From: Magallana gigas
Taxonomy: Eukaryota
Direction of reading: 5' to 3'
Assembly (NCBI RefSeq): GCF_963853765.1
Contig: NC_088861.1
Coordinates: 25,854,001 to 25,918,000 of the forward strand
DNA: 64,000 nt
The position numbers and the translations under genes are program-made. This document shows, piece after piece, positions 12,537 through 62,200 of the stretch (its first letter is position 1; every line of letters begins with the position of its first letter). The notes under the pieces are model-generated. The model had not been told where the DNA came from. It worked only from the letters and a program-made list of their open reading frames with translations, and ran no database searches.

Positions 12537-13876
12537 AAATAAGAGGCCCATGAGCCACATTGCTCACCTGAACAACAAAAGACATAATAAAATCAGCATT
12601 ACGAAGTCATATACAAAAAATATGGACAATGTAGTCTAACAGTTCCTGTATTTGTTCAGAATTTTCTGTTTTTCATTGATACCTTTTTGTCACTGTATGG
12701 TCATTTCATATATTGAGCATTACAGTTCTCAATAAGATCTAAATCAAATGGTATATAAACTTACACCAATTGTTCCGGGAACAAAGTGTAAACAATTTTA
12801 AAGAATCAACAATATGTCAAAATGCTCGCATATAAATAGAACCATATATTATAACCTATCAGTTTTGTTGAACTTGCAATGTTTTCCTTTGTGAACTTGG
12901 ACTACCCCCCCCCCCCCCCATTTTTGGCTCCACCCTTCTCCTGAAAAATATAATTTTGATGAAGTTGAATCTACACTATCTAAGCTTGCTTTCACTAATG
13001 TTGCACCTTTTCTAAGGAATGTTTTTTTTTTAAAGATTTCTCTCCAAATACTTCTTTGTAAAGATTTAACCCCTCCTCATTGTCCCCCTATCCAACCCCG
13101 AGGATCATAATTTGACCAAACTTGAATCTACCATACCTGATATTTCACTCAAGTTAAAATCTTTTCTGGCCAGTTGTGTTCTGAGTAGAAAATTTAAAAT
13201 AAAATTTCTTCATATTTTCCTTTGTAAATATTTTATCCCCTATTATGGCCCAACCTAACCCACGTGACCGTGATTTGAACAAACTTGAATCTACACTATT
13301 TAAGGATGCTTCCACACAAGTTTCAGTTTTTCTGGGATAATGGTATGTGACCAGATGATTTTTAAAGATTAACTCTATATATTCCTACGTAACATTTCGA
13401 CCCCCCCCCCCCAAATTGTCACCCAACCCTACCCCCAGGAACCATGATTTTATCAAATTTGAATCCACACTATCTGTGTATGCCTTCATAGAAGTTTCAA
13501 CTTTTTGACTAAATGGTTTTTGAATAGATGCTTTTTAAAGTTTAACCTTATATACTTCTGTGTAAAAATTCCACCTCCCCCCCCCCCCCCCCCCCCCGAT
13601 CATGGCCCCATCTTACCTACACCTTGTATGCTTCTAAACTTTCACAGAATTATACAAACCGGTAAGGAACGTATATTGCTTATGCAATACTCTCAGACTG
13701 CTTGTTTTAACAAACTTGACTTCCATTTACCCAATGATGCGTTGTGCCATGTTTGGTTGGAACTGGCCCAGTGGTTCAGAAGAAGTCGAAAATGTACAAA
13801 GTTTACAGACAGACAAACGGACGCCGGACAAAAACTGGCCAGAAAAATTCTCTTGAGCTTTCAGCTCAGGTGGGCT
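12537..13876 (+). mobile_element. Helentron-type non-autonomous element with ~165-bp satellite core (Cg170-like)
   Basis: Start AAGAGGCCCATGAGCCACATTGCTCACCTGA; about 4 diverged units marked by AACTTGAATCTACACT at ~12963, 13119, 13282, 13456; (CAGA)n then terminal TGAGCTTTCAGCTCAGGTG hairpin. Recognised from recollection of oyster Cg170/Helitron-N2 elements. Confidence 0.75.
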
Positions 13877-37824: not shown

Positions 37825-40800
37825 TTACTTGGAGTATACATAATCTTCCAGGATTTTTGGTTGACGGGTACGTAACGGGTAACGTCTCTCGGACTGGATG
37901 GGTGCTGTTGATTTCAGCGGTGTAGACAGACTAGACTCCATGTTTTTCGCAATAGTAGGTTTAACCAACGGAGTTGATCTCCTCGCACTGTCCGATAAAA
38001 CCGACGGTAAAGATCTGCTGTTCGGCGTCTTTAACTTCTCTGCCCAATTGTCCATTGAAACTGAACTTGAAACACTCGGCTCAGGTATCTCGACATCTGG
38101 TAACATGATTGGAATCTGTGATGTTACAATCTGATCTGCATGCCTCCTCCACTGTGTTGAAGGGTCCACTTGCACACGATAGGAAACAGGTCCAGTTCTT
38201 TGAGCAATCATTCCCGGAATCCATTTATCCTTCCCACGATAATCACGCATCATTACCGACTGTCCTGGTTCAAATTCTCTGTTCTGTGTAGTTCTCTGTA
38301 AACACATTTCTTCTTGCTTCTGCTTGACATGTAACTCTGTGTTTGGCCTCAAAAGATCCATTTTCGTTCTCAACTCCCTCCCCATCATGAGCTTTGCTGG
38401 TGTTTCATTTGTTGTTGCATGTGCAGTATTTCTATACGCCAACAAGAAATTTGCCAGTTTTCTTTCAATGCTCCCTGCATCATTCTTACTGCATTTCATG
38501 GCTTGCTTGAAAGTTTGGACAAAACGCTCTGCAAGTCCATTACTAGATGGGTGGTACGGTGATGTCTTGATGTGCTTTATGCCGTTAGCATTCAAGAACT
38601 CTTCAAATTCTCTTGAGGTAAATTGTGGGCCATTGTCACTCACAATTGTTACTGGAAGTCTATTTCTGGAGAAAATGGTTCTCAGAACATCAATAGTACG
38701 TGTTGATGTGGTTGTGCTCATTTTCACCACCTCTGGCCACTTTGAATTTGAATCCACCATTATAAGAAACATATATCCTAAAAACGGTCCTGCAAAATCT
38801 ATGTGAATTCGCTCCCATGGCTTGGTTGGCCACTCCCAAGCATTCAATGGTGCTCCCTTAGGCGAATTCTGGTTTTGTTGACATCCATTACATCTTTTGG
38901 CGATAGTTTCAATGTCCTGGTCAATTCCTGGCCACCAACAGAAACTCCTAGCAAGTGTTTTCATTTTGACCACTCCTAGATGTCCTTCATGTATCTGTGA
39001 AATCACCAAGTTGCGGAGTTTGGTAGGTATAATGACTCTTACTCCCCACATGATACAGCCATGGTGAATAGATAGTTCACTTCGTCGTGAGTAGTATGGT
39101 GCTAACTCTCCATCTTTGTCAGTAGAAGTCCAATCACTGTTAATGCACGACATGACACGACCTAGAACTAAGTCTTTACGAGTTTCGTTTTGAATGTTTT
39201 TGCTAGAAACTGGTAGAGTTTCAATCTGTCCAAGATAAAAAGCGTCCACCATATCTATGGTTACATCAGACTCTGTGCTTTTCAGTGGTAAGCGTGACAT
39301 GGAATCTGCATTCGCATGCTTAGAAGTTTTACGGAATCCAATTTCGTAGTCATAAGCAGACAAGAAGAGAGAATAGCGCTGTAATCTTGAAGATGCTGTA
39401 ACTGGGACTCCTCTCTGAGGACTGAAAATGTGTATCAAGGGCTGATGGTCGGTGATCAACTTGAATTTCCTACCAAACAAGTACGAATGGAATTTCTTGA
39501 TCCCCCATATGATTCCCAAGGCTTCTTTATCAATCTGAGAATAGTTTTTCTCCGCTGGTGCTAATGTGCGAGAGGCGAATGCGATTGGTCTCTCTGTTCC
39601 ATCAGGTAGCTCATGAGAAATAACTGCACCGAGTCCATAAGGTGATGCATCACATGCCAGGGAAATAGGCAATTCAGGGCTATAATGTGTAAGTACCAGA
39701 TCTGATGCTACTAAGTCCTTCACCTTGTTGAATGATTCTTCACAGGATTCTGTCCAATTCCAATGGCTGTCTTTTCGCAACAAGTTATGCAACGGTCCAA
39801 GCACTGTTGCCAGGTCAGGTAAGAATTTACCATAATAGTTCACTAAACCTAAGAACGATCTTAGTTGAGAGACATTACATGGGGAAGGTGCTTTAACTAT
39901 GGCATCAATCTTCTCTGGTGTCTTGTGTAGACCATTTCTATCAATCACATGTCCACAAAAGGTAATGCTTTCCTTGAAGAATTCGCACTTCTCTAGATTT
40001 GCTCTCAGTCCATATTGGCTCAATCGCTTCAGTACCATGTCCAAATTCTTGAGATGTTCTTCATTACTCTTGCCGGTTATAACCATGTCGTCTAACATAC
40101 ACTGAGTTCCAGGGACTCCTTGTAATACTTGCTCAATGGTCCTCTGCCAAATAGCAGGCGCTGACGCTATGCCAAAGGCCATGCGATTATAACGATATAA
40201 TCCCTTATGTGTGCTAATGGTAAGTAGCTCCTTGCACGATTCATCCACTGGAAGTTGCAAGTATGCTTGCTTCAAATCGATCTTGGAGAAATGCATTCCA
40301 CCATTTAGGTTGGCGAAGATGTCATCAATTTTAGGTAATGGATACTGATCAACATTGAGTAGTGGGTTAAGCGTAACCTTAAAATCGCCACATATTCTGA
40401 TGCTTCCATTCTTCTTTAGAACAGGCACAATTGGAGTTGCCCAATCACTATGCTGTACTTTGGTCAGAGTTCCTTCCGCTTCTAATCTCTGGAGTTCTTC
40501 TTCCACCTTTGTTCGTAAGGAAAAAGGAACAGTCCTGGCCTTGACATATTTTGGTTTGTTTTCTCTGAGTGTCAGTTTTGCTGTAATGCCCTTCACAGTT
40601 CCAACTTCATCAACGAAGACATCTTTATATTTGTCTATAATTTCACTTACGCTGGTAGGCTTCACAGTGCTAATAGCATGCGTGTCCTTAATCAATCTCC
40701 AGTCAAGTTGAATTTTTCTCAGCCAATCCCTGCCAAGAAGAGCTGGTCCTCCCTTTTCAACTATGTATAATGGCAATGTCTGTTTAGTGCCACCGTATTC

Positions 40801-41919
40801 CACTTCCACGTCCATATAACCCACTGGCTTGATGTGTTCTCCCGAGTACGTGCGTAGAGTGATGTCTGCAGTTTTTAACTTCAGATCTCTGAACTTCCTC
40901 CTGAATTCTTCCTCCGCCATGACCGAAATAGCTGAACCAGTGTCCAATTCCATTTTCATCCTCATTCCATTTATTTTCAGATGGATCCATATGATGTCCG
41001 CACTTGTTAAATTGTTTAGTTCTAAACTAGCTATATAGTTGTCATCACTCACATCCTGAGGGTCATTTTCAACATAATGAACAGGTTTTCTTCTTTCATG
41101 TTTTCCAGATGTAGGCATTTGAGGTTTTGAAGTTTTACACGCTTTCTTTATGTGTCCCGTATTATGACAGTTGTGGCACTCAGCATTCCTGAATTTACAG
41201 TCCTTTGCTACGTGGCCACTTCCATTACAACGATAACACCGTGCTCCTCCTGACCGACAGTCTTTCGCTATATGTCCTTTCTCACCACACCGATAACACT
41301 GTACTTCATTTTTCCTGTCGTTTCCTCTGGAACGTCTATTCTTCACATGCAGTCTGTTCACGGCTCCTGTATCTGTCCGATTCCTAGCCTGTACTAATTC
41401 TGTTGCATCCTTAGCTGCCGCCTCCATTGCCACACTGATCTCCATAGCTTTTTCAAATGTCAAGTCTTTCTCTGACAGCAAGCGCTTTTGAATGTGAGGG
41501 TGTCTTATACCACATACCACTCTATCCCTCAACTTTTCATTTAGCGAAGCATTAAAATCACAATAAATCGAGAGTTTCTTTAACTGAGCTACATACTCCG
41601 TTATTGTTTCTCCTTCCTTCTGGTCTCTTTTATCGAAACGGAAGCGTTCTGCTGTTTTGATGGGCTTAGGGGACAAATGGCTGTTGAGTAATGTCACCAA
41701 GTCCTGATAAGTCTTCTCAGCTGGTTTATCAGGAAAAGTCAAGTCCCGCAGGAGAGAATATAATCGTCCACCGATGAGACATAATAAAGACGGTACCTTT
41801 TTTCCAGGATCTATCTCATTCACTGTAAAGTACTGCTCAAATCGTTCGACGTACGATTCCCACGGTTCGATAGTCTCGTCAAATGGGTCAATCTTTCCAA
41901 TTAAACCAAACGCCGCCAT
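37825..41919 (-). CDS. Gag-Pol polyprotein (~1364 aa): gag, 3 CCHC knuckles, aspartic protease, RT, RNase H, integrase
   Basis: LDTGSA (PR); WATPIVPV..RICGDFK..PLP..FSKIDLKQAY..FGIASAPAIWQ..MLDD (RT); LACDASPYG..ERPIAFAS..YSQIDKEAL..TDHQPL (RH); H..H..C..C, RIHIDF, SDNGPQF, SNGLAERFVQ (IN). Confidence 0.97.
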   Translation of the reverse strand: MAAFGLIGKIDPFDETIEPWESYVERFEQYFTVNEIDPGKKVPSLLCLIGGRLYSLLRDLTFPDKPAEKTYQDLVTLLNSHLSPKPIKTAERFRFDKRDQKEGETITEYVAQLKKLSIYCDFNASLNEKLRDRVVCGIRHPHIQKRLLSEKDLTFEKAMEISVAMEAAAKDATELVQARNRTDTGAVNRLHVKNRRSRGNDRKNEVQCYRCGEKGHIAKDCRSGGARCYRCNGSGHVAKDCKFRNAECHNCHNTGHIKKACKTSKPQMPTSGKHERRKPVHYVENDPQDVSDDNYIASLELNNLTSADIIWIHLKINGMRMKMELDTGSAISVMAEEEFRRKFRDLKLKTADITLRTYSGEHIKPVGYMDVEVEYGGTKQTLPLYIVEKGGPALLGRDWLRKIQLDWRLIKDTHAISTVKPTSVSEIIDKYKDVFVDEVGTVKGITAKLTLRENKPKYVKARTVPFSLRTKVEEELQRLEAEGTLTKVQHSDWATPIVPVLKKNGSIRICGDFKVTLNPLLNVDQYPLPKIDDIFANLNGGMHFSKIDLKQAYLQLPVDESCKELLTISTHKGLYRYNRMAFGIASAPAIWQRTIEQVLQGVPGTQCMLDDMVITGKSNEEHLKNLDMVLKRLSQYGLRANLEKCEFFKESITFCGHVIDRNGLHKTPEKIDAIVKAPSPCNVSQLRSFLGLVNYYGKFLPDLATVLGPLHNLLRKDSHWNWTESCEESFNKVKDLVASDLVLTHYSPELPISLACDASPYGLGAVISHELPDGTERPIAFASRTLAPAEKNYSQIDKEALGIIWGIKKFHSYLFGRKFKLITDHQPLIHIFSPQRGVPVTASSRLQRYSLFLSAYDYEIGFRKTSKHANADSMSRLPLKSTESDVTIDMVDAFYLGQIETLPVSSKNIQNETRKDLVLGRVMSCINSDWTSTDKDGELAPYYSRRSELSIHHGCIMWGVRVIIPTKLRNLVISQIHEGHLGVVKMKTLARSFCWWPGIDQDIETIAKRCNGCQQNQNSPKGAPLNAWEWPTKPWERIHIDFAGPFLGYMFLIMVDSNSKWPEVVKMSTTTSTRTIDVLRTIFSRNRLPVTIVSDNGPQFTSREFEEFLNANGIKHIKTSPYHPSSNGLAERFVQTFKQAMKCSKNDAGSIERKLANFLLAYRNTAHATTNETPAKLMMGRELRTKMDLLRPNTELHVKQKQEEMCLQRTTQNREFEPGQSVMMRDYRGKDKWIPGMIAQRTGPVSYRVQVDPSTQWRRHADQIVTSQIPIMLPDVEIPEPSVSSSVSMDNWAEKLKTPNSRSLPSVLSDSARRSTPLVKPTIAKNMESSLSTPLKSTAPIQSERRYPLRTRQPKILEDYVYSK

Positions 41920-41992
41920 TACCACAGATCCAAAATATAATGGGACGGGTTAGAAACAGACAATTTGGAATAATTTGAGGTTACCGGAGTTT

Positions 41993-59284: not shown

Positions 59285-62200
59285 GATCAGTTCAATGTAA
59301 GAATCAGAATTCAGTGGCCACGCATAGTCACGGGTTTTCTTCATACTTGACAATTTGATAGACTTTGGTGAGTAAAAAATCCTAACACCATTTGTTTGTT
59401 GCTATGTGGTCCCGTTGCCATGGTAACCAAGGGTAAAGATGTAAAAATGTCATATTAATGCTTATTTGAGAACATATTGTGAGTAATGTGCAGAACCTGG
59501 GGTTTCCAGGGTAGAATAATATATTATTAAAAATAGTTGTCATTTTTCAAAAGAAAGAAAAAAATTTATGGAGAAACGCATATTTTTAGAGCGTTTCCAT
59601 GGTTACTAAACAGAAATTTTAAAATCTGTTTTCGTCATTTAATTTGAATAAAAAGTGCAAATGTTGGTTTTTTTGGTAAACACTTACTGATTGTGCAATT
59701 AAGAATTTAAATATGAAAATTGAGAACTGTTGCTGTGGTACATGTAACAAGCTTAAATATAAGGAAAATTATAATATTTGTAGGCATCACTGTCGTGTAT
59801 CCGCGCCGGTAGTGACATGTTTGGATAACGTGAAAATGGCGTATCCATTGCAAAAACAATGAGTGTTGTGTTCTTTTTTCAATCGACAATGAGGTAAATA
59901 TTAATTAAAACATCGTAATAGTCGTTCATATTTTTCTTACGGTTTTGCAGTTTAAAAAAGTGAGTGTTTTTTTGTTCATCGTAAATAAAAACGACTTATT
60001 TGTAGGAATATCAATCGTTAACGTGTCATTTTAATGCTAAAACCAAGATCTATTTCGAGATAACATAGATAATATAACACATACCAGAAATCTGAAGCAG
60101 CCAAAATTAATTGAAAGATTACTCTAACCAAATGAAATCATTTCAATATATTTTTAATACACTAATATGTATAAAAATAGCAGTAACTTTATGCACCTGC
60201 TAAATAAAAAGTACGGTTTGGATTAACGAATTATTCCGGTTTGGATGCTGAAATATAAATTGTGCAAATGGTACGGTTTGAACAATTTTAAGATAAAGCA
60301 TTTTTGATATTTTAGACAAAAATGGAACAGTTTGCCTTTTATCGGTGTGCAACTGTGTGTCTGCTATAAATATAAGTCATATTTACTCTGTTGTTAAAAA
60401 TAGTTGGTCAAAAAGTGATGACAAGACCTGAGTAAACGTCGCCATTTTACATGTACATTTATATGTTAATCATAATTCTCACCAGAAAACCAAAACGATA
60501 AATATGTATCTTTGTATATTACTGATCAAGAGGTTTTGTTGATTTTTTCAATTAATAAACTAAAATAATAAAATTGATTACACAATATACCGGTATTTCA
60601 CATTGCTCTGGTTTCATCCAATGAATATTGCAATTCTGTTCATAATTTGGTACATATAAAATAAAACAATGAACATGTAAGTTAAAATCCATAACCAATA
60701 TTTAGTTCTTTTGTACTGCAATGACAAAATTATGGAAGTTAATGCTTACGAAAAGGACATATGCACCTAAGTACAGTGCATGCACAGAAAGTGAACGTAT
60801 AATATAATTTACAACATCATAATTGAGTTCATTGAAAAGTAAAATGCTTTCTTTGGTGACCCATGCGGGAAATAAAGGTGGCGATACTGCAGAAAAATAC
60901 AAAACCCGCGTTAGGATTAAACATGAAAGTATAATAATAAAAATTTCATATTTAAAAATTTGCCAAAGCGCAGTTTTATGGCTGTTGCAAATCTAAAAAG
61001 TTGTTTGGAAACGTTTCAATTATTAATTTAAACAATTAGACAAGTGTATATGATGTTTTGTAAATTAGATACTCTTTATTACATTTGTTCAAGTTCATTT
61101 TTAAAATAGAATTATTACTTAGTATGTAATAAATGTAATAATAGATACCCTTTTTCCATATCACAGCCCGTATCAGCCCTTGACCAATATCATCCCTCGG
61201 GCCTACGGCCCTCGGGCTGATATTGGAGTTGGTATAATTCTGTCTTTTGACTGATCTCTTGATTTTTTCCCGACATCGTTTAAAGCCGAAAACATTAGAC
61301 TCATAACTTGATCAAAACTGTCGTAAACACATGTTCATATTTGTGTCGTAAAGATTTTGGTAAGGCTGAACCTTTCTAAATTAATATCGATTGATTGATT
61401 ATACAACAGACTAAACATATCTATAAAAAAAAATTCTGCATGCAATTTTTTTATAATTAAGCCAATTTATTTGGAGCTTTTTTAAAATTGAAATTCAAAT
61501 TACGGTATATAAAGTTTTGTTGACTTATTGAAAAGTCTTTCAACGTGTATGTTTATTTCTTAAACAATGTGACTTCAAATGTCTATCACATGACGATCTC
61601 CATAATATTGAAAGCATGCTTTGCAGTGAGGGCATGTATATCGCACAGTGGCGATGCTATATCCCCTTCACGAGGGAATAATTAATAGAACTGTTTAAAC
61701 TTATATACTAACCACATCCAAACCGTATCAGATGCGTATCCAAACCGATCCTATTTGGAAAAACAAGGTCATCCAAACCTGTTCCGTTGTTCAAAATTAA
61801 TCGACATAAACTGCTTATTTACATGATTTTCACATAAACTTCGTAGAAAATTAAAGACTTATATGTTTTTAAATGAATATGACGATCTCTTTAATGTTAA
61901 AGTAAACAATGTTAGCGTTAAATAACAAGAAAAATTATCAAGAAACAAACGGTGCCGCCATTTTCACTTTATCCAAACACGTCACTACCGGCGCGGATAC
62001 ACGACAGTGGGCATCTTTGAATGGATATTATTCACTTATAATGTATAAACTATAAAATCAAATGGTGAGAAAAAATAAAGTAGATCCATAACTTTAATGA
62101 TCCTAGAAAAAAATCTGAAATTTTCTAAAAATAACTGCCGTTGCTATGAACTTTTCAAAAAGTAAGAATTTCTGTGTGATTTTTTACGCAACTTAATTTT

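What the first reader, a model, noticed from the sequence alone, without database searches (positions are those of the whole stretch)
59788..62009. CAC-ended element with a 5-bp GC-rich TSD: candidate Transib/RAG-like non-autonomous transposon
Seen: 54-bp TIRs starting CACTGTC, with an exact GGCAT duplication; 2-, 3- and 4-bp TSD readings do not fit. Established: CAC termini plus a 5-bp TSD characterise Transib and ProtoRAG/RAG-like transposons, whereas CACTA and Chapaev make 2-4-bp TSDs. RAG-like transposons have been reported in oysters. Inference: a recently mobile derivative that implies an autonomous Transib/RAGL partner with these ends. The heptamer differs from CACAGTG at two positions and no 12/23-spaced nonamer is seen.
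Basis: partly seen in the sequence, partly recalled or inferred. Interest (0 to 1): 0.7.

Follow-up and report, generated by a model that had tools for sequence, protein, structure and literature searches.

The report
Orphan oyster transposon, 5-6-bp footprint
This is a real, protein-less jumping gene with about 55 copies in an oyster-type genome, but its copies duplicate 5 or 6 target bases at AT-rich sites and no RAG/Transib-type enzyme is linked to it, so the proposed RAG-like ancestry is unproven and the element is fairly ordinary.

Summary
Window 59788-62009 is a 2,222-bp element with 54-nt inverted ends (52/54) starting CAC and flanked by GGCAT on both sides. An uninterrupted paralogue of the host repeat carries one GGCAT, so exactly 5 bp were duplicated.

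It belongs to a non-coding family of about 55 copies (109 ends), mostly 2.5-3.3 kb. The outer ~80 nt are near-identical, interiors differ by up to 15%, and the closest copies are 98-99.3% alike.

The Transib/RAG-like reading is not supported.
- Of 17 independent insertions, 10 have 5-bp, 6 have exact 6-bp and 1 has a 4-bp duplication.
- Targets are AT-rich (32% GC), with T/G at position 2 and A/C at the penultimate position.
- There is no A-rich nonamer. A 9-nt motif (GGTTTGGAT) sits in each end and in subterminal clusters.
- The published oyster RAGL end consensus does not fit.
- None of the genome's five RAG1-domain loci lies near a copy.
- No copy I examined codes for a protein, and no other family shares the terminal 12 nt.

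The moving enzyme is unidentified. I rate a CMCT-type enzyme at about 0.4, hAT5/hAT6-type at about 0.3 and true Transib/RAGL at about 0.15.

The scan noted similar elements before (s1-375871, probably this same family, and s1-382416), also without finding the enzyme.

The parts
59783..59787 (.). Left copy of the 5-bp target-site duplication (GGCAT)
   Evidence: The paralogous empty site has a single GGCAT.
59788..62009 (+). Whole non-autonomous element, 2,222 bp and 30-32% GC. It is a deletion derivative of the 2.5-3.3-kb family copies.
   Evidence: It has no ORF above 66 aa, no Rfam family and no tRNA.
59788..59841 (+). Left terminal inverted repeat, 54 nt, starting CACTGTC
   Evidence: The first 29 nt are exact in 85 of 109 genomic ends. 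The outer 80 nt are 99-100% conserved across 17 copies.
59818..59826 (+). Motif copy TGTTTGGAT inside the left repeat, 23 nt after the heptamer
60215..60246 (+). Left subterminal cluster: two GGTTTGGAT copies (60215-60223 and 60238-60246), with a third degenerate copy in many family members
   Evidence: 7 motif hits in the element; shuffles give a mean of 0.46. The positions are kept in 7 other copies.
61716..61779 (-). Right subterminal cluster: three ATCCAAACC copies (61716-61724, 61738-61746, 61771-61779), inverted relative to the left cluster
61971..61979 (-). Motif copy inside the right repeat (ATCCAAACA)
61956..62009 (-). Right terminal inverted repeat, 54 nt, 2 mismatches to the left one
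62010..62014 (.). Right copy of the target-site duplication (GGCAT)

Best explanation
The element is one copy of an 'orphan' family of non-coding cut-and-paste DNA transposons, with about 55 copies in this genome.

Shown:
- It has sharp CAC...GTG ends, 54-nt inverted repeats and target duplications.
- An empty paralogous site proves insertion with a 5-bp duplication.
- The family makes 5-bp duplications and, less often, 6-bp ones.
- Insertion sites are AT-rich and weakly palindromic, with T/G at position 2 and A/C at the penultimate position.
- The outer ~80 nt and a 9-nt motif (one copy per end repeat, plus clusters 230-490 bp inside) are kept while interiors drift.

Inferred:
- A DDE transposase supplied in trans binds the motif and the end repeats, cuts at CAC/GTG, and joins the ends to target strands staggered by 5 or 6 bp.
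- From the CA..TG-type termini, the enzyme most likely belongs to the broad CACTA/Mirage/Chapaev/Transib (CMCT) group.
- It is not a canonical Transib or an oyster RAGL. Those give strict 5-bp duplications at GC-rich or CAxTG sites and have heptamer-spacer-A-rich-nonamer ends.
- No copy of the enzyme gene carrying these ends was found in the copies examined. It may be lost, absent from this individual, hidden in an unread copy, or carried by an element with different ends that cross-mobilises this family.
For: Family size and ends: 109 end matches with up to 3 mismatches in 29 nt, against 0 for the control, and more than 40 near-identical left ends.

Duplications: 10 x 5 bp, 6 x 6 bp and 1 x 4 bp in 17 independent paired copies. 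Empty paralogous sites confirm 5 bp in 3 cases. For one 6-bp case, four paralogues align without a gap across the rebuilt site.

Target pattern: among 29 left flanks, position -2 is A in 19, -1 is never G, and -4 is T in 17 and never C. Duplications are 32% GC.

Motif map.

Conservation: the ends are better conserved than the interior.

No coding capacity in the 20 fetched copies. The extra length of the long copies comes from nested repeats.

CA..TG termini are described as the CMCT hallmark (PMC12730594). Transposase_21-type (CACTA-like) genes are common here, with 35 hits and many long open frames.
Against: - No transposase was found, so the enzyme class rests on DNA features only.
- 6-bp duplications lie outside the 2-5 bp range reported for CMCT (PMC12730594).
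- The T...A target pattern and the subterminal repeats fit hAT at least as well.
- None of the 35 Transposase_21 hits lies inside or next to a copy.
Confidence: 0.4

Rival explanations
1. The family is moved by a hAT transposase of the hAT5/hAT6 kind. These are animal hAT lineages that make 5-bp or 6-bp instead of 8-bp duplications. Their BED fingers would bind the repeated 9-nt motif.
For: - 5- and 6-bp duplications are exactly what defines hAT5 and hAT6, which group together among animal hATs (PMC12730594, citing Repbase Rep. 2007).
- T near the start and A at the penultimate position of the duplication mirrors the hAT nTnnnnAn preference (PMC10368747).
- Subterminal repeats and a need for about 200 bp of each end are typical of hAT (PMC10368747).
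- hAT is one of the richest superfamilies in bivalves (PMC10294476). This genome has at least 123 hAT dimerisation-domain hits.
Against: - The third terminal base is C. In 22 hAT families it is reported as always G (PMC1131882, legend of Fig. S7).
- None of the 123 hAT hits lies inside a copy. Only 150 of 254 candidates were scored.
- A single hAT family that mixes 5 and 6 bp is not described in what I read.
Confidence: 0.3
2. One reading: a non-autonomous derivative of a Transib or RAG-like (RAGL) transposon, moved by a RAG1-core transposase that recognises these ends.
For: - CAC termini are invariant.
- 5 bp is the commonest duplication (10/17) and the only one in the five youngest copies.
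- The first seven bases match the RSS heptamer at 5 of 7 and the protostome RAGL consensus at 5 of 7.
- The genome holds two RAG1-domain open frames of 1,021 aa without stops.
- A recent preprint shows that duplication length and ends vary within Transib (bioRxiv 10.64898/2026.08.26.747230).
Against: - 6 of 17 duplications are 6 bp, whereas RAGL duplications are 'invariably 5 bp' (PMC7204232).
- Target sites are AT-rich with T/G at position 2 and A/C at the penultimate position, not GC-rich or CAxTG (PMC1131882).
- Where an A-rich nonamer is expected, the sequence is TGTTTGGAT.
- The AAA at positions 8-10 of the protostome RAGL consensus is absent.
- All five RAG1-domain loci are more than 90 kb from any end.
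- Only one Transib ORF was found among 14,275 mollusc DDE elements (PMC10294476).
Confidence: 0.15
3. The family belongs to another or an undescribed superfamily whose enzyme makes flexible 5-6-bp staggered cuts. One possibility is an unusual P-, MULE- or Kolobok-type lineage, since duplication lengths in this genome often depart from the textbook values.
For: - No described superfamily combines CAC ends, mixed 5/6-bp duplications and this target pattern.
- Earlier notes of this scan describe oyster elements with atypical duplication lengths. These are unchecked leads only.
- No other family in the genome shares even the terminal 12 nt.
Against: There is no positive evidence. IS3EU/GingerRoot (6 bp) is excluded by its TA..TA termini (PMC10045372). 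Integrase-type elements end TG..CA, not CA..TG.
Confidence: 0.15

Closest known systems
Transib and non-autonomous Transib-N families (Kapitonov & Jurka 2005, PMC1131882)
   Same: CAC...GTG termini, 5 bp as the commonest duplication, and inverted ends of a few tens of bases.
   Different: A third of the insertions duplicate 6 bp. Targets are AT-rich, with T/G at position 2 and A/C at the penultimate position. There is no A-rich nonamer at the 23-nt spacing. Subterminal motif clusters are present. No RAG1-core gene is linked.
Protostome RAGL transposons of oysters (Martin et al. 2020, PMC7204232)
   Same: The ends start CACT with C at position 7. That paper reports non-autonomous TIR-only derivatives for a pearl oyster.
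   Different: The published consensus CACTWMCAAACKTYKBB is not matched beyond 5 of the first 7 bases. RAGL duplications are invariably 5 bp. The genome's RAG1-domain loci are unlinked.
hAT5 / hAT6 groups of hAT (Repbase Rep. 2007, cited in PMC12730594)
   Same: Duplications of 5 or 6 bp, T...A target symmetry like hAT, and subterminal repeats.
   Different: The third terminal base is C, not G. Both lengths are mixed within one family. No hAT gene lies inside any copy.
CACTA/EnSpm and the wider CMCT clade (PMC12730594)
   Same: CA..TG-type termini (CACTG against CACTA) and repeated subterminal binding motifs.
   Different: CMCT duplications are 2-5 bp, and 3 bp for CACTA. None of the 35 Transposase_21 loci lies in a copy.

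Membership tests
Transib | Termini beginning 5'-CAC (heptamer positions 1-3 invariant) | tested here: met
   CAC in 105 of the 109 ends found
Transib | Precise 5-bp target-site duplication | tested here: not met
   10 x 5 bp, 6 x 6 bp, 1 x 4 bp in 17 insertions. One 6-bp case is confirmed by the spacing in four paralogous empty sites.
Transib | 38-bp end made of a CACAATG-like heptamer, a 23-bp spacer and an A-rich nonamer with AA at nonamer positions 5-6 (PMC1131882) | tested here: not met
   positions 31-39 read TGTTTGGAT. The heptamer CACTGTC matches CACAATG at 4 of 7.
Transib | Preference for GC-rich targets | tested here: not met
   duplications 32% GC, sites with flanks 40%, window 35%. 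A at -2, T at -4.
Transib | Autonomous partner encoding a ~700-aa RAG1-core-like transposase between the same ends | tested here: inconclusive
   No coding copy among the 20 read. The five PF12940 loci are unlinked to any end. About ten longer or solo copies were not readable.
RAGL / ProtoRAG | Ends fitting the protostome consensus CACTWMCAAACKTYKBB (PMC7204232) | tested here: not met
   only CACT and C7 agree, and AAA at 8-10 is absent. The consensus is not enriched in the genome (19 hits against 34 for the control).
RAGL / ProtoRAG | Convergent RAG1L-RAG2L genes between the ends in full copies | tested here: inconclusive
   the RAG1-domain loci are at least 90 kb from any end. RAG2L was not searched.
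CMCT clade (CACTA/Mirage/Chapaev/Transib) | 5'-CA..TG-3' termini | tested here: met
CMCT clade (CACTA/Mirage/Chapaev/Transib) | 2-5-bp duplications (PMC12730594) | tested here: not met
   6 of 17 are 6 bp
CMCT clade (CACTA/Mirage/Chapaev/Transib) | [quoted passage not shown] | not testable with these tools
   No transposase found. The Transposase_21 loci are not in any copy.
hAT5 / hAT6 | 5-bp (hAT5) or 6-bp (hAT6) duplications | tested here: met
   However, both lengths occur within one family, which is not described.
hAT5 / hAT6 | hAT-type termini with G as the third base (PMC1131882, Fig. S7 legend) | tested here: not met
   the third base is C in all copies
hAT5 / hAT6 | Target preference with T at position 2 and A at the penultimate position (nTnnnnAn in 8-bp hATs) | tested here: inconclusive
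   A at -2 in 19 of 29 and T at -4 in 17 of 29. In the duplications, position 2 is T or G.
hAT5 / hAT6 | Partner encoding BED and hAT dimerisation domains | tested here: inconclusive
   none of the 123 hits lies in a copy (150 of 254 candidates scored)
IS3EU / GingerRoot | TA..TA termini with 6-bp duplications (PMC10045372) | tested here: not met
   the termini are CAC..GTG

The most novel reading that the evidence does not exclude
The family is the natural substrate of a RAG1-fold (CMCT) transposase with a flexible 5/6-bp strand-transfer spacing. That enzyme could be one of the genome's two intact RAG1-domain genes acting in trans, even though those genes do not carry these ends. If so, this would be a mollusc RAG-like enzyme with a live, many-copy DNA substrate, recognised through a repeated 9-nt motif in place of an A-rich nonamer.
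Probability: 0.08. Interest if true: 0.7.

Novelty: new member of a known kind. Interest (0 to 1): 0.3.

Why it matters
If the ends really belonged to a RAG-like enzyme, the family would offer a many-copy natural substrate for studying how RAG-type recombinases recognise DNA outside vertebrates. As it stands, the value is more modest.

First, it is a clean case showing that 'CAC ends plus a 5-bp duplication' seen at one copy does not identify Transib. The family-wide table shows mixed 5/6-bp duplications and a hAT-like target pattern.

Second, it documents an orphan non-autonomous family whose termini are kept nearly invariant while its interiors drift.

Tried and rejected
1. Autonomous partner among longer copies:
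   - L050 (4.4 kb), L036 (9.2 kb) and L034 (first 9.8 kb of a 17.9-kb pair) have no transposase ORFs.
   - Their extra DNA is nested repeats: a ~725-bp fold-back MITE with thousands of copies, and an ~8-copy element carrying a HECT-like gene piece.
   - L028, the start of the 5.9-kb copy, is non-coding.
2. Recurrent stop-free frames in the right third of copies are AT-rich, differ in frame between copies, and have no Pfam hits. I rejected them as exon remnants.
3. Genome scans for RAG1 (PF12940), Transposase_21 (PF02992), KDZ (PF18758) and hAT dimerisation (PF05699) gave no hit inside or beside any copy.
4. Sister families were sought three ways. All found only this family or chance-level hits.
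   - Heptamer + 23-25 nt + motif.
   - The diverged end variant on C5.
   - The terminal 12-mer with a non-family 13th base (15 hits against 26 for the control).
5. The published RAGL end consensus is not enriched and does not lie near the RAG1 loci.
6. A metagenome scan for the end pattern gave 0 hits.
I did not try to get those letters another way.
8. IS3EU, Ginger, Polinton and Dada were considered for the 6-bp duplications and rejected on their termini (PMC10045372).
9. No RNA gene lies in the element.

Full report
**Observation.** The stretch 59788-62009 is bounded by a 54-nt inverted repeat (59788-59841 and 61956-62009, 52 of 54 complementary). Both arms start CACTGTC, and the flanks read GGCAT on each side. 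A 22-nt end pattern occurs at exactly these two places in the 64-kb window, while 100 shuffles gave none. Only the 5-bp reading gives an exact direct repeat.

Independent proof comes from the host sequence. The element sits inside another repeat, and an uninterrupted paralogue of that repeat (L032:5912-6222, 85% identical) contains one GGCAT. The alignment of the left flank ends there and that of the right flank begins there, overlapping by exactly five bases.

**Family.** The window lies on contig 9 of a 564-Mb genome with ten large contigs. Earlier notes of this scan call it Pacific-oyster-type; I did not verify the species. The left 83 nt have at least 40 near-identical matches genome-wide. 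A 29-nt end pattern with up to 3 mismatches has 109 matches against 0 for the reversed control, and 85 of those matches are exact. They pair into about 45 elements of 1.9-3.7 kb, a few longer pairs and about a dozen solo ends.

I fetched 20 copies with 10 kb each.

Among the copies read:
- The window copy is a deletion derivative. It shares its first ~566 bp and last ~780 bp with all copies (84-90% identity) and lacks about 0.3-1 kb of interior.
- Its nearest relative is a damaged copy, L040, at 98.6%.
- The youngest subfamily (2.66 kb) has copies 98.1-99.3% identical at different sites with different duplications.
- The outer 80 nt on the left and 40 nt on the right are 99-100% conserved across 17 copies, against 90-97% further in.

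This is what repeated selection by a transposase for intact ends would produce.

**No coding capacity.** No copy has a stop-free frame above 134 aa. The recurrent ones are AT-rich, in different frames in different copies, and without Pfam hits. No Rfam family or tRNA lies in the window copy.

The longer copies are long because other repeats are nested in them:
- L050 holds a ~725-bp fold-back MITE with thousands of copies.
- The left end in L034 is followed by an unrelated element present in about 8 copies at 99% identity, which carries a HECT-like gene piece, plus another MITE.
- L036 holds 6.7 kb of low-complexity and repeat sequence.

**Target-site duplications.** In 17 independent paired copies the exact direct repeat is 5 bp in 10, 6 bp in 6 and 4 bp in 1.

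A 6-bp repeat cannot be read as a 5-bp one unless it is a homopolymer, so these are not chance extensions. Empty paralogous sites confirm 5 bp for the window copy, L039 and L037. For the 6-bp case L045, the site rebuilt with one copy of the hexamer aligns without any gap across the junction to four paralogues of its host repeat.

The five youngest copies all have 5 bp, while the older groups mix 5 and 6. My own hand calculation, not a tool result, gives a one-sided exact p of about 0.04, which is suggestive only.

The duplications average 32% GC against 35% for the window. Over 29 distinct left flanks, position -2 is A in 19, position -1 is never G, and position -4 is T in 17 and never C. The right flanks mirror this. 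The preferred site is therefore weakly palindromic, n[T/G]n(n)[A/C]n.

**Ends and internal motifs.** After the heptamer comes a 23-nt spacer and then TGTTTGGAT, on both ends. The same 9-mer (GGTTTGGAT) recurs two or three times 430-490 bp from the left end and three times 230-295 bp from the right end, in inverted orientation. The element has 7 motif hits against a mean of 0.46 in shuffles, and the positions are kept in seven other copies.

Genome-wide, heptamer + 23-25 nt + motif gives 94 hits against 5 for the control, and all belong to this family. So there is a second conserved block at RSS23-like spacing, but it is symmetric on both ends, not A-rich, and repeated subterminally. That makes it a transposase-binding repeat of the kind seen in CACTA and hAT elements, not an RSS-like nonamer.

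**Search for the enzyme.**
- The RAG1 core family (PF12940) hits five loci. Two have 1,021-aa open frames without stops (C2:53473763, C9:44605801). None is within 90 kb of any of the 109 ends.
- None of the 35 Transposase_21 hits, 2 KDZ hits or 123 hAT-dimerisation hits lies inside or beside a copy. The hAT scan scored only 150 of 254 candidates.
- The published protostome RAGL end consensus is not enriched in this genome (19 hits against 34 for the control) and does not lie near the RAG1 loci.
- No other family shares even the terminal 12 nt (15 hits against 26 for the control, no inverted pairs).
- The only diverged ends are three same-strand copies on C5.
- A metagenome scan found nothing.
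I could therefore not look for empty alleles in other individuals.

**Comparison with known kinds.**

*Transib* is defined by a RAG1-core transposase, precise 5-bp duplications, GC-rich targets (or CASTG/CAWTG), and a CACAATG heptamer, 23-bp spacer and A-rich nonamer (PMC1131882). Only the CAC start is met here.

*Oyster RAGL* elements have ends fitting CACTWMCAAACKTYKBB and 'invariably' 5-bp duplications (PMC7204232). Neither is met.

*Other literature that bears on this:*
- A 2026 preprint shows that duplication length and ends vary inside the Transib lineage. It argues that such DNA traits must not override transposase homology (bioRxiv 10.64898/2026.08.26.747230). This keeps Transib possible, but it also means the DNA signature proves little.
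- The wider CMCT clade shares CA..TG termini and makes 2-5-bp duplications (PMC12730594). The termini fit; the 6-bp cases do not.
- The same paper records that hAT5 and hAT6, two related animal hAT groups, make 5- and 6-bp duplications.
- hAT also shows a T...A target preference and depends on subterminal repeats bound by BED fingers (PMC10368747). Both resemble what is seen here.
- Against hAT, the third terminal base is C, where 22 hAT families have G (PMC1131882, Fig. S7 legend).
- IS3EU/GingerRoot (6 bp) has TA..TA termini (PMC10045372) and is excluded.
- In a survey of mollusc genomes only one Transib ORF was found among 14,275 DDE elements, while hAT was among the richest (PMC10294476).

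**Verdict.** The element is real, non-autonomous and part of a moderately young family that needs an enzyme in trans. It is not excluded.

My ranking rests on DNA features only:

| Enzyme class | Probability |
|---|---|
| CMCT-type, not canonical Transib/RAGL | about 0.4 |
| hAT5/hAT6-type | about 0.3 |
| True Transib/RAGL | about 0.15 |
| Another or undescribed kind | about 0.15 |

**Earlier notes of this scan.** Two earlier findings on other DNA of this genome describe protein-less elements with CAC ends and 5-bp duplications whose enzyme could not be identified (s1-382416, s1-375871). The second is 3,518 letters long, the same length as the copy at C1:52999464-53002981, so it is probably this family. 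I could not check that. Other notes report RAG1-fold transposons nested in a MITE. I looked for such a gene in the 9.2-kb copy L036 and found none.

Noticed in passing
window 37825-41925 (-): Open frame of 1,366 aa with zinc knuckle, aspartic protease, reverse transcriptase, RNase H and integrase domains. It is an apparently intact Gypsy-type LTR retrotransposon pol/gag-pol.
   Followed up: no
window 22598-23017 (-): A 139-aa ORF with a strong DUF7869 match (E 8.5e-25). Its function is unknown and its context was not examined.
   Followed up: no
window 59470-59787 and 62010-62130; L032:5912-6222: The element is inserted into another repeat. An 85%-identical uninterrupted paralogue of that repeat lies in L032. 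The host repeat was not classified.
   Followed up: partly
window 13000-13600; also L044:5560-6400, L048:5330-5670, L010:940-1230: A tandemly structured repeat of about 170 bp per unit, in many copies at 72-78% identity. It is the host of the 6-bp-duplication insertion in L045.
   Followed up: partly
G000 C2:53473763-53475607 (+) and C9:44605801-44607645 (-): Two RAG1-core matches (276-286 bits, profile positions 21-632) inside 1,021-aa open frames without stops. There are also broken copies at C6:37214366-37215755 and C10:22204296-22204736. None is linked to this family. The flanks and any RAG2-like neighbour were not read.
   Followed up: partly
G000 C5:48159332, 48166848, 48174848 (+): Three diverged copies of the end sequence, all on the same strand, spaced 7,516 and exactly 8,000 bp apart, with no inverted partner. 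This could be a tandem duplication or an assembly artefact. It could not be fetched.
   Followed up: no
L034:3915-6250 (G000 C8:38573963-38576298): A HECT-like gene piece (a 410-aa stop-free frame followed by a HECT-type exon) lies just inside a left end of the family. It sits next to an element with about 8 copies at 99% identity. Pfam found nothing in the first frame.
   Followed up: partly
L050:1598-2320; L034:1921-2643: Two different ~725-bp fold-back MITE families, each with thousands of first-look candidates in the genome, are nested in family copies.
   Followed up: no
L043 and L044 (G000 C1:58309177-58312048 and 58321162-58324031): Two copies 99.86% identical with the same TGTAC duplication and the same flanks, 12 kb apart. 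This is a segmental duplication after insertion, counted once in the table.
   Followed up: yes
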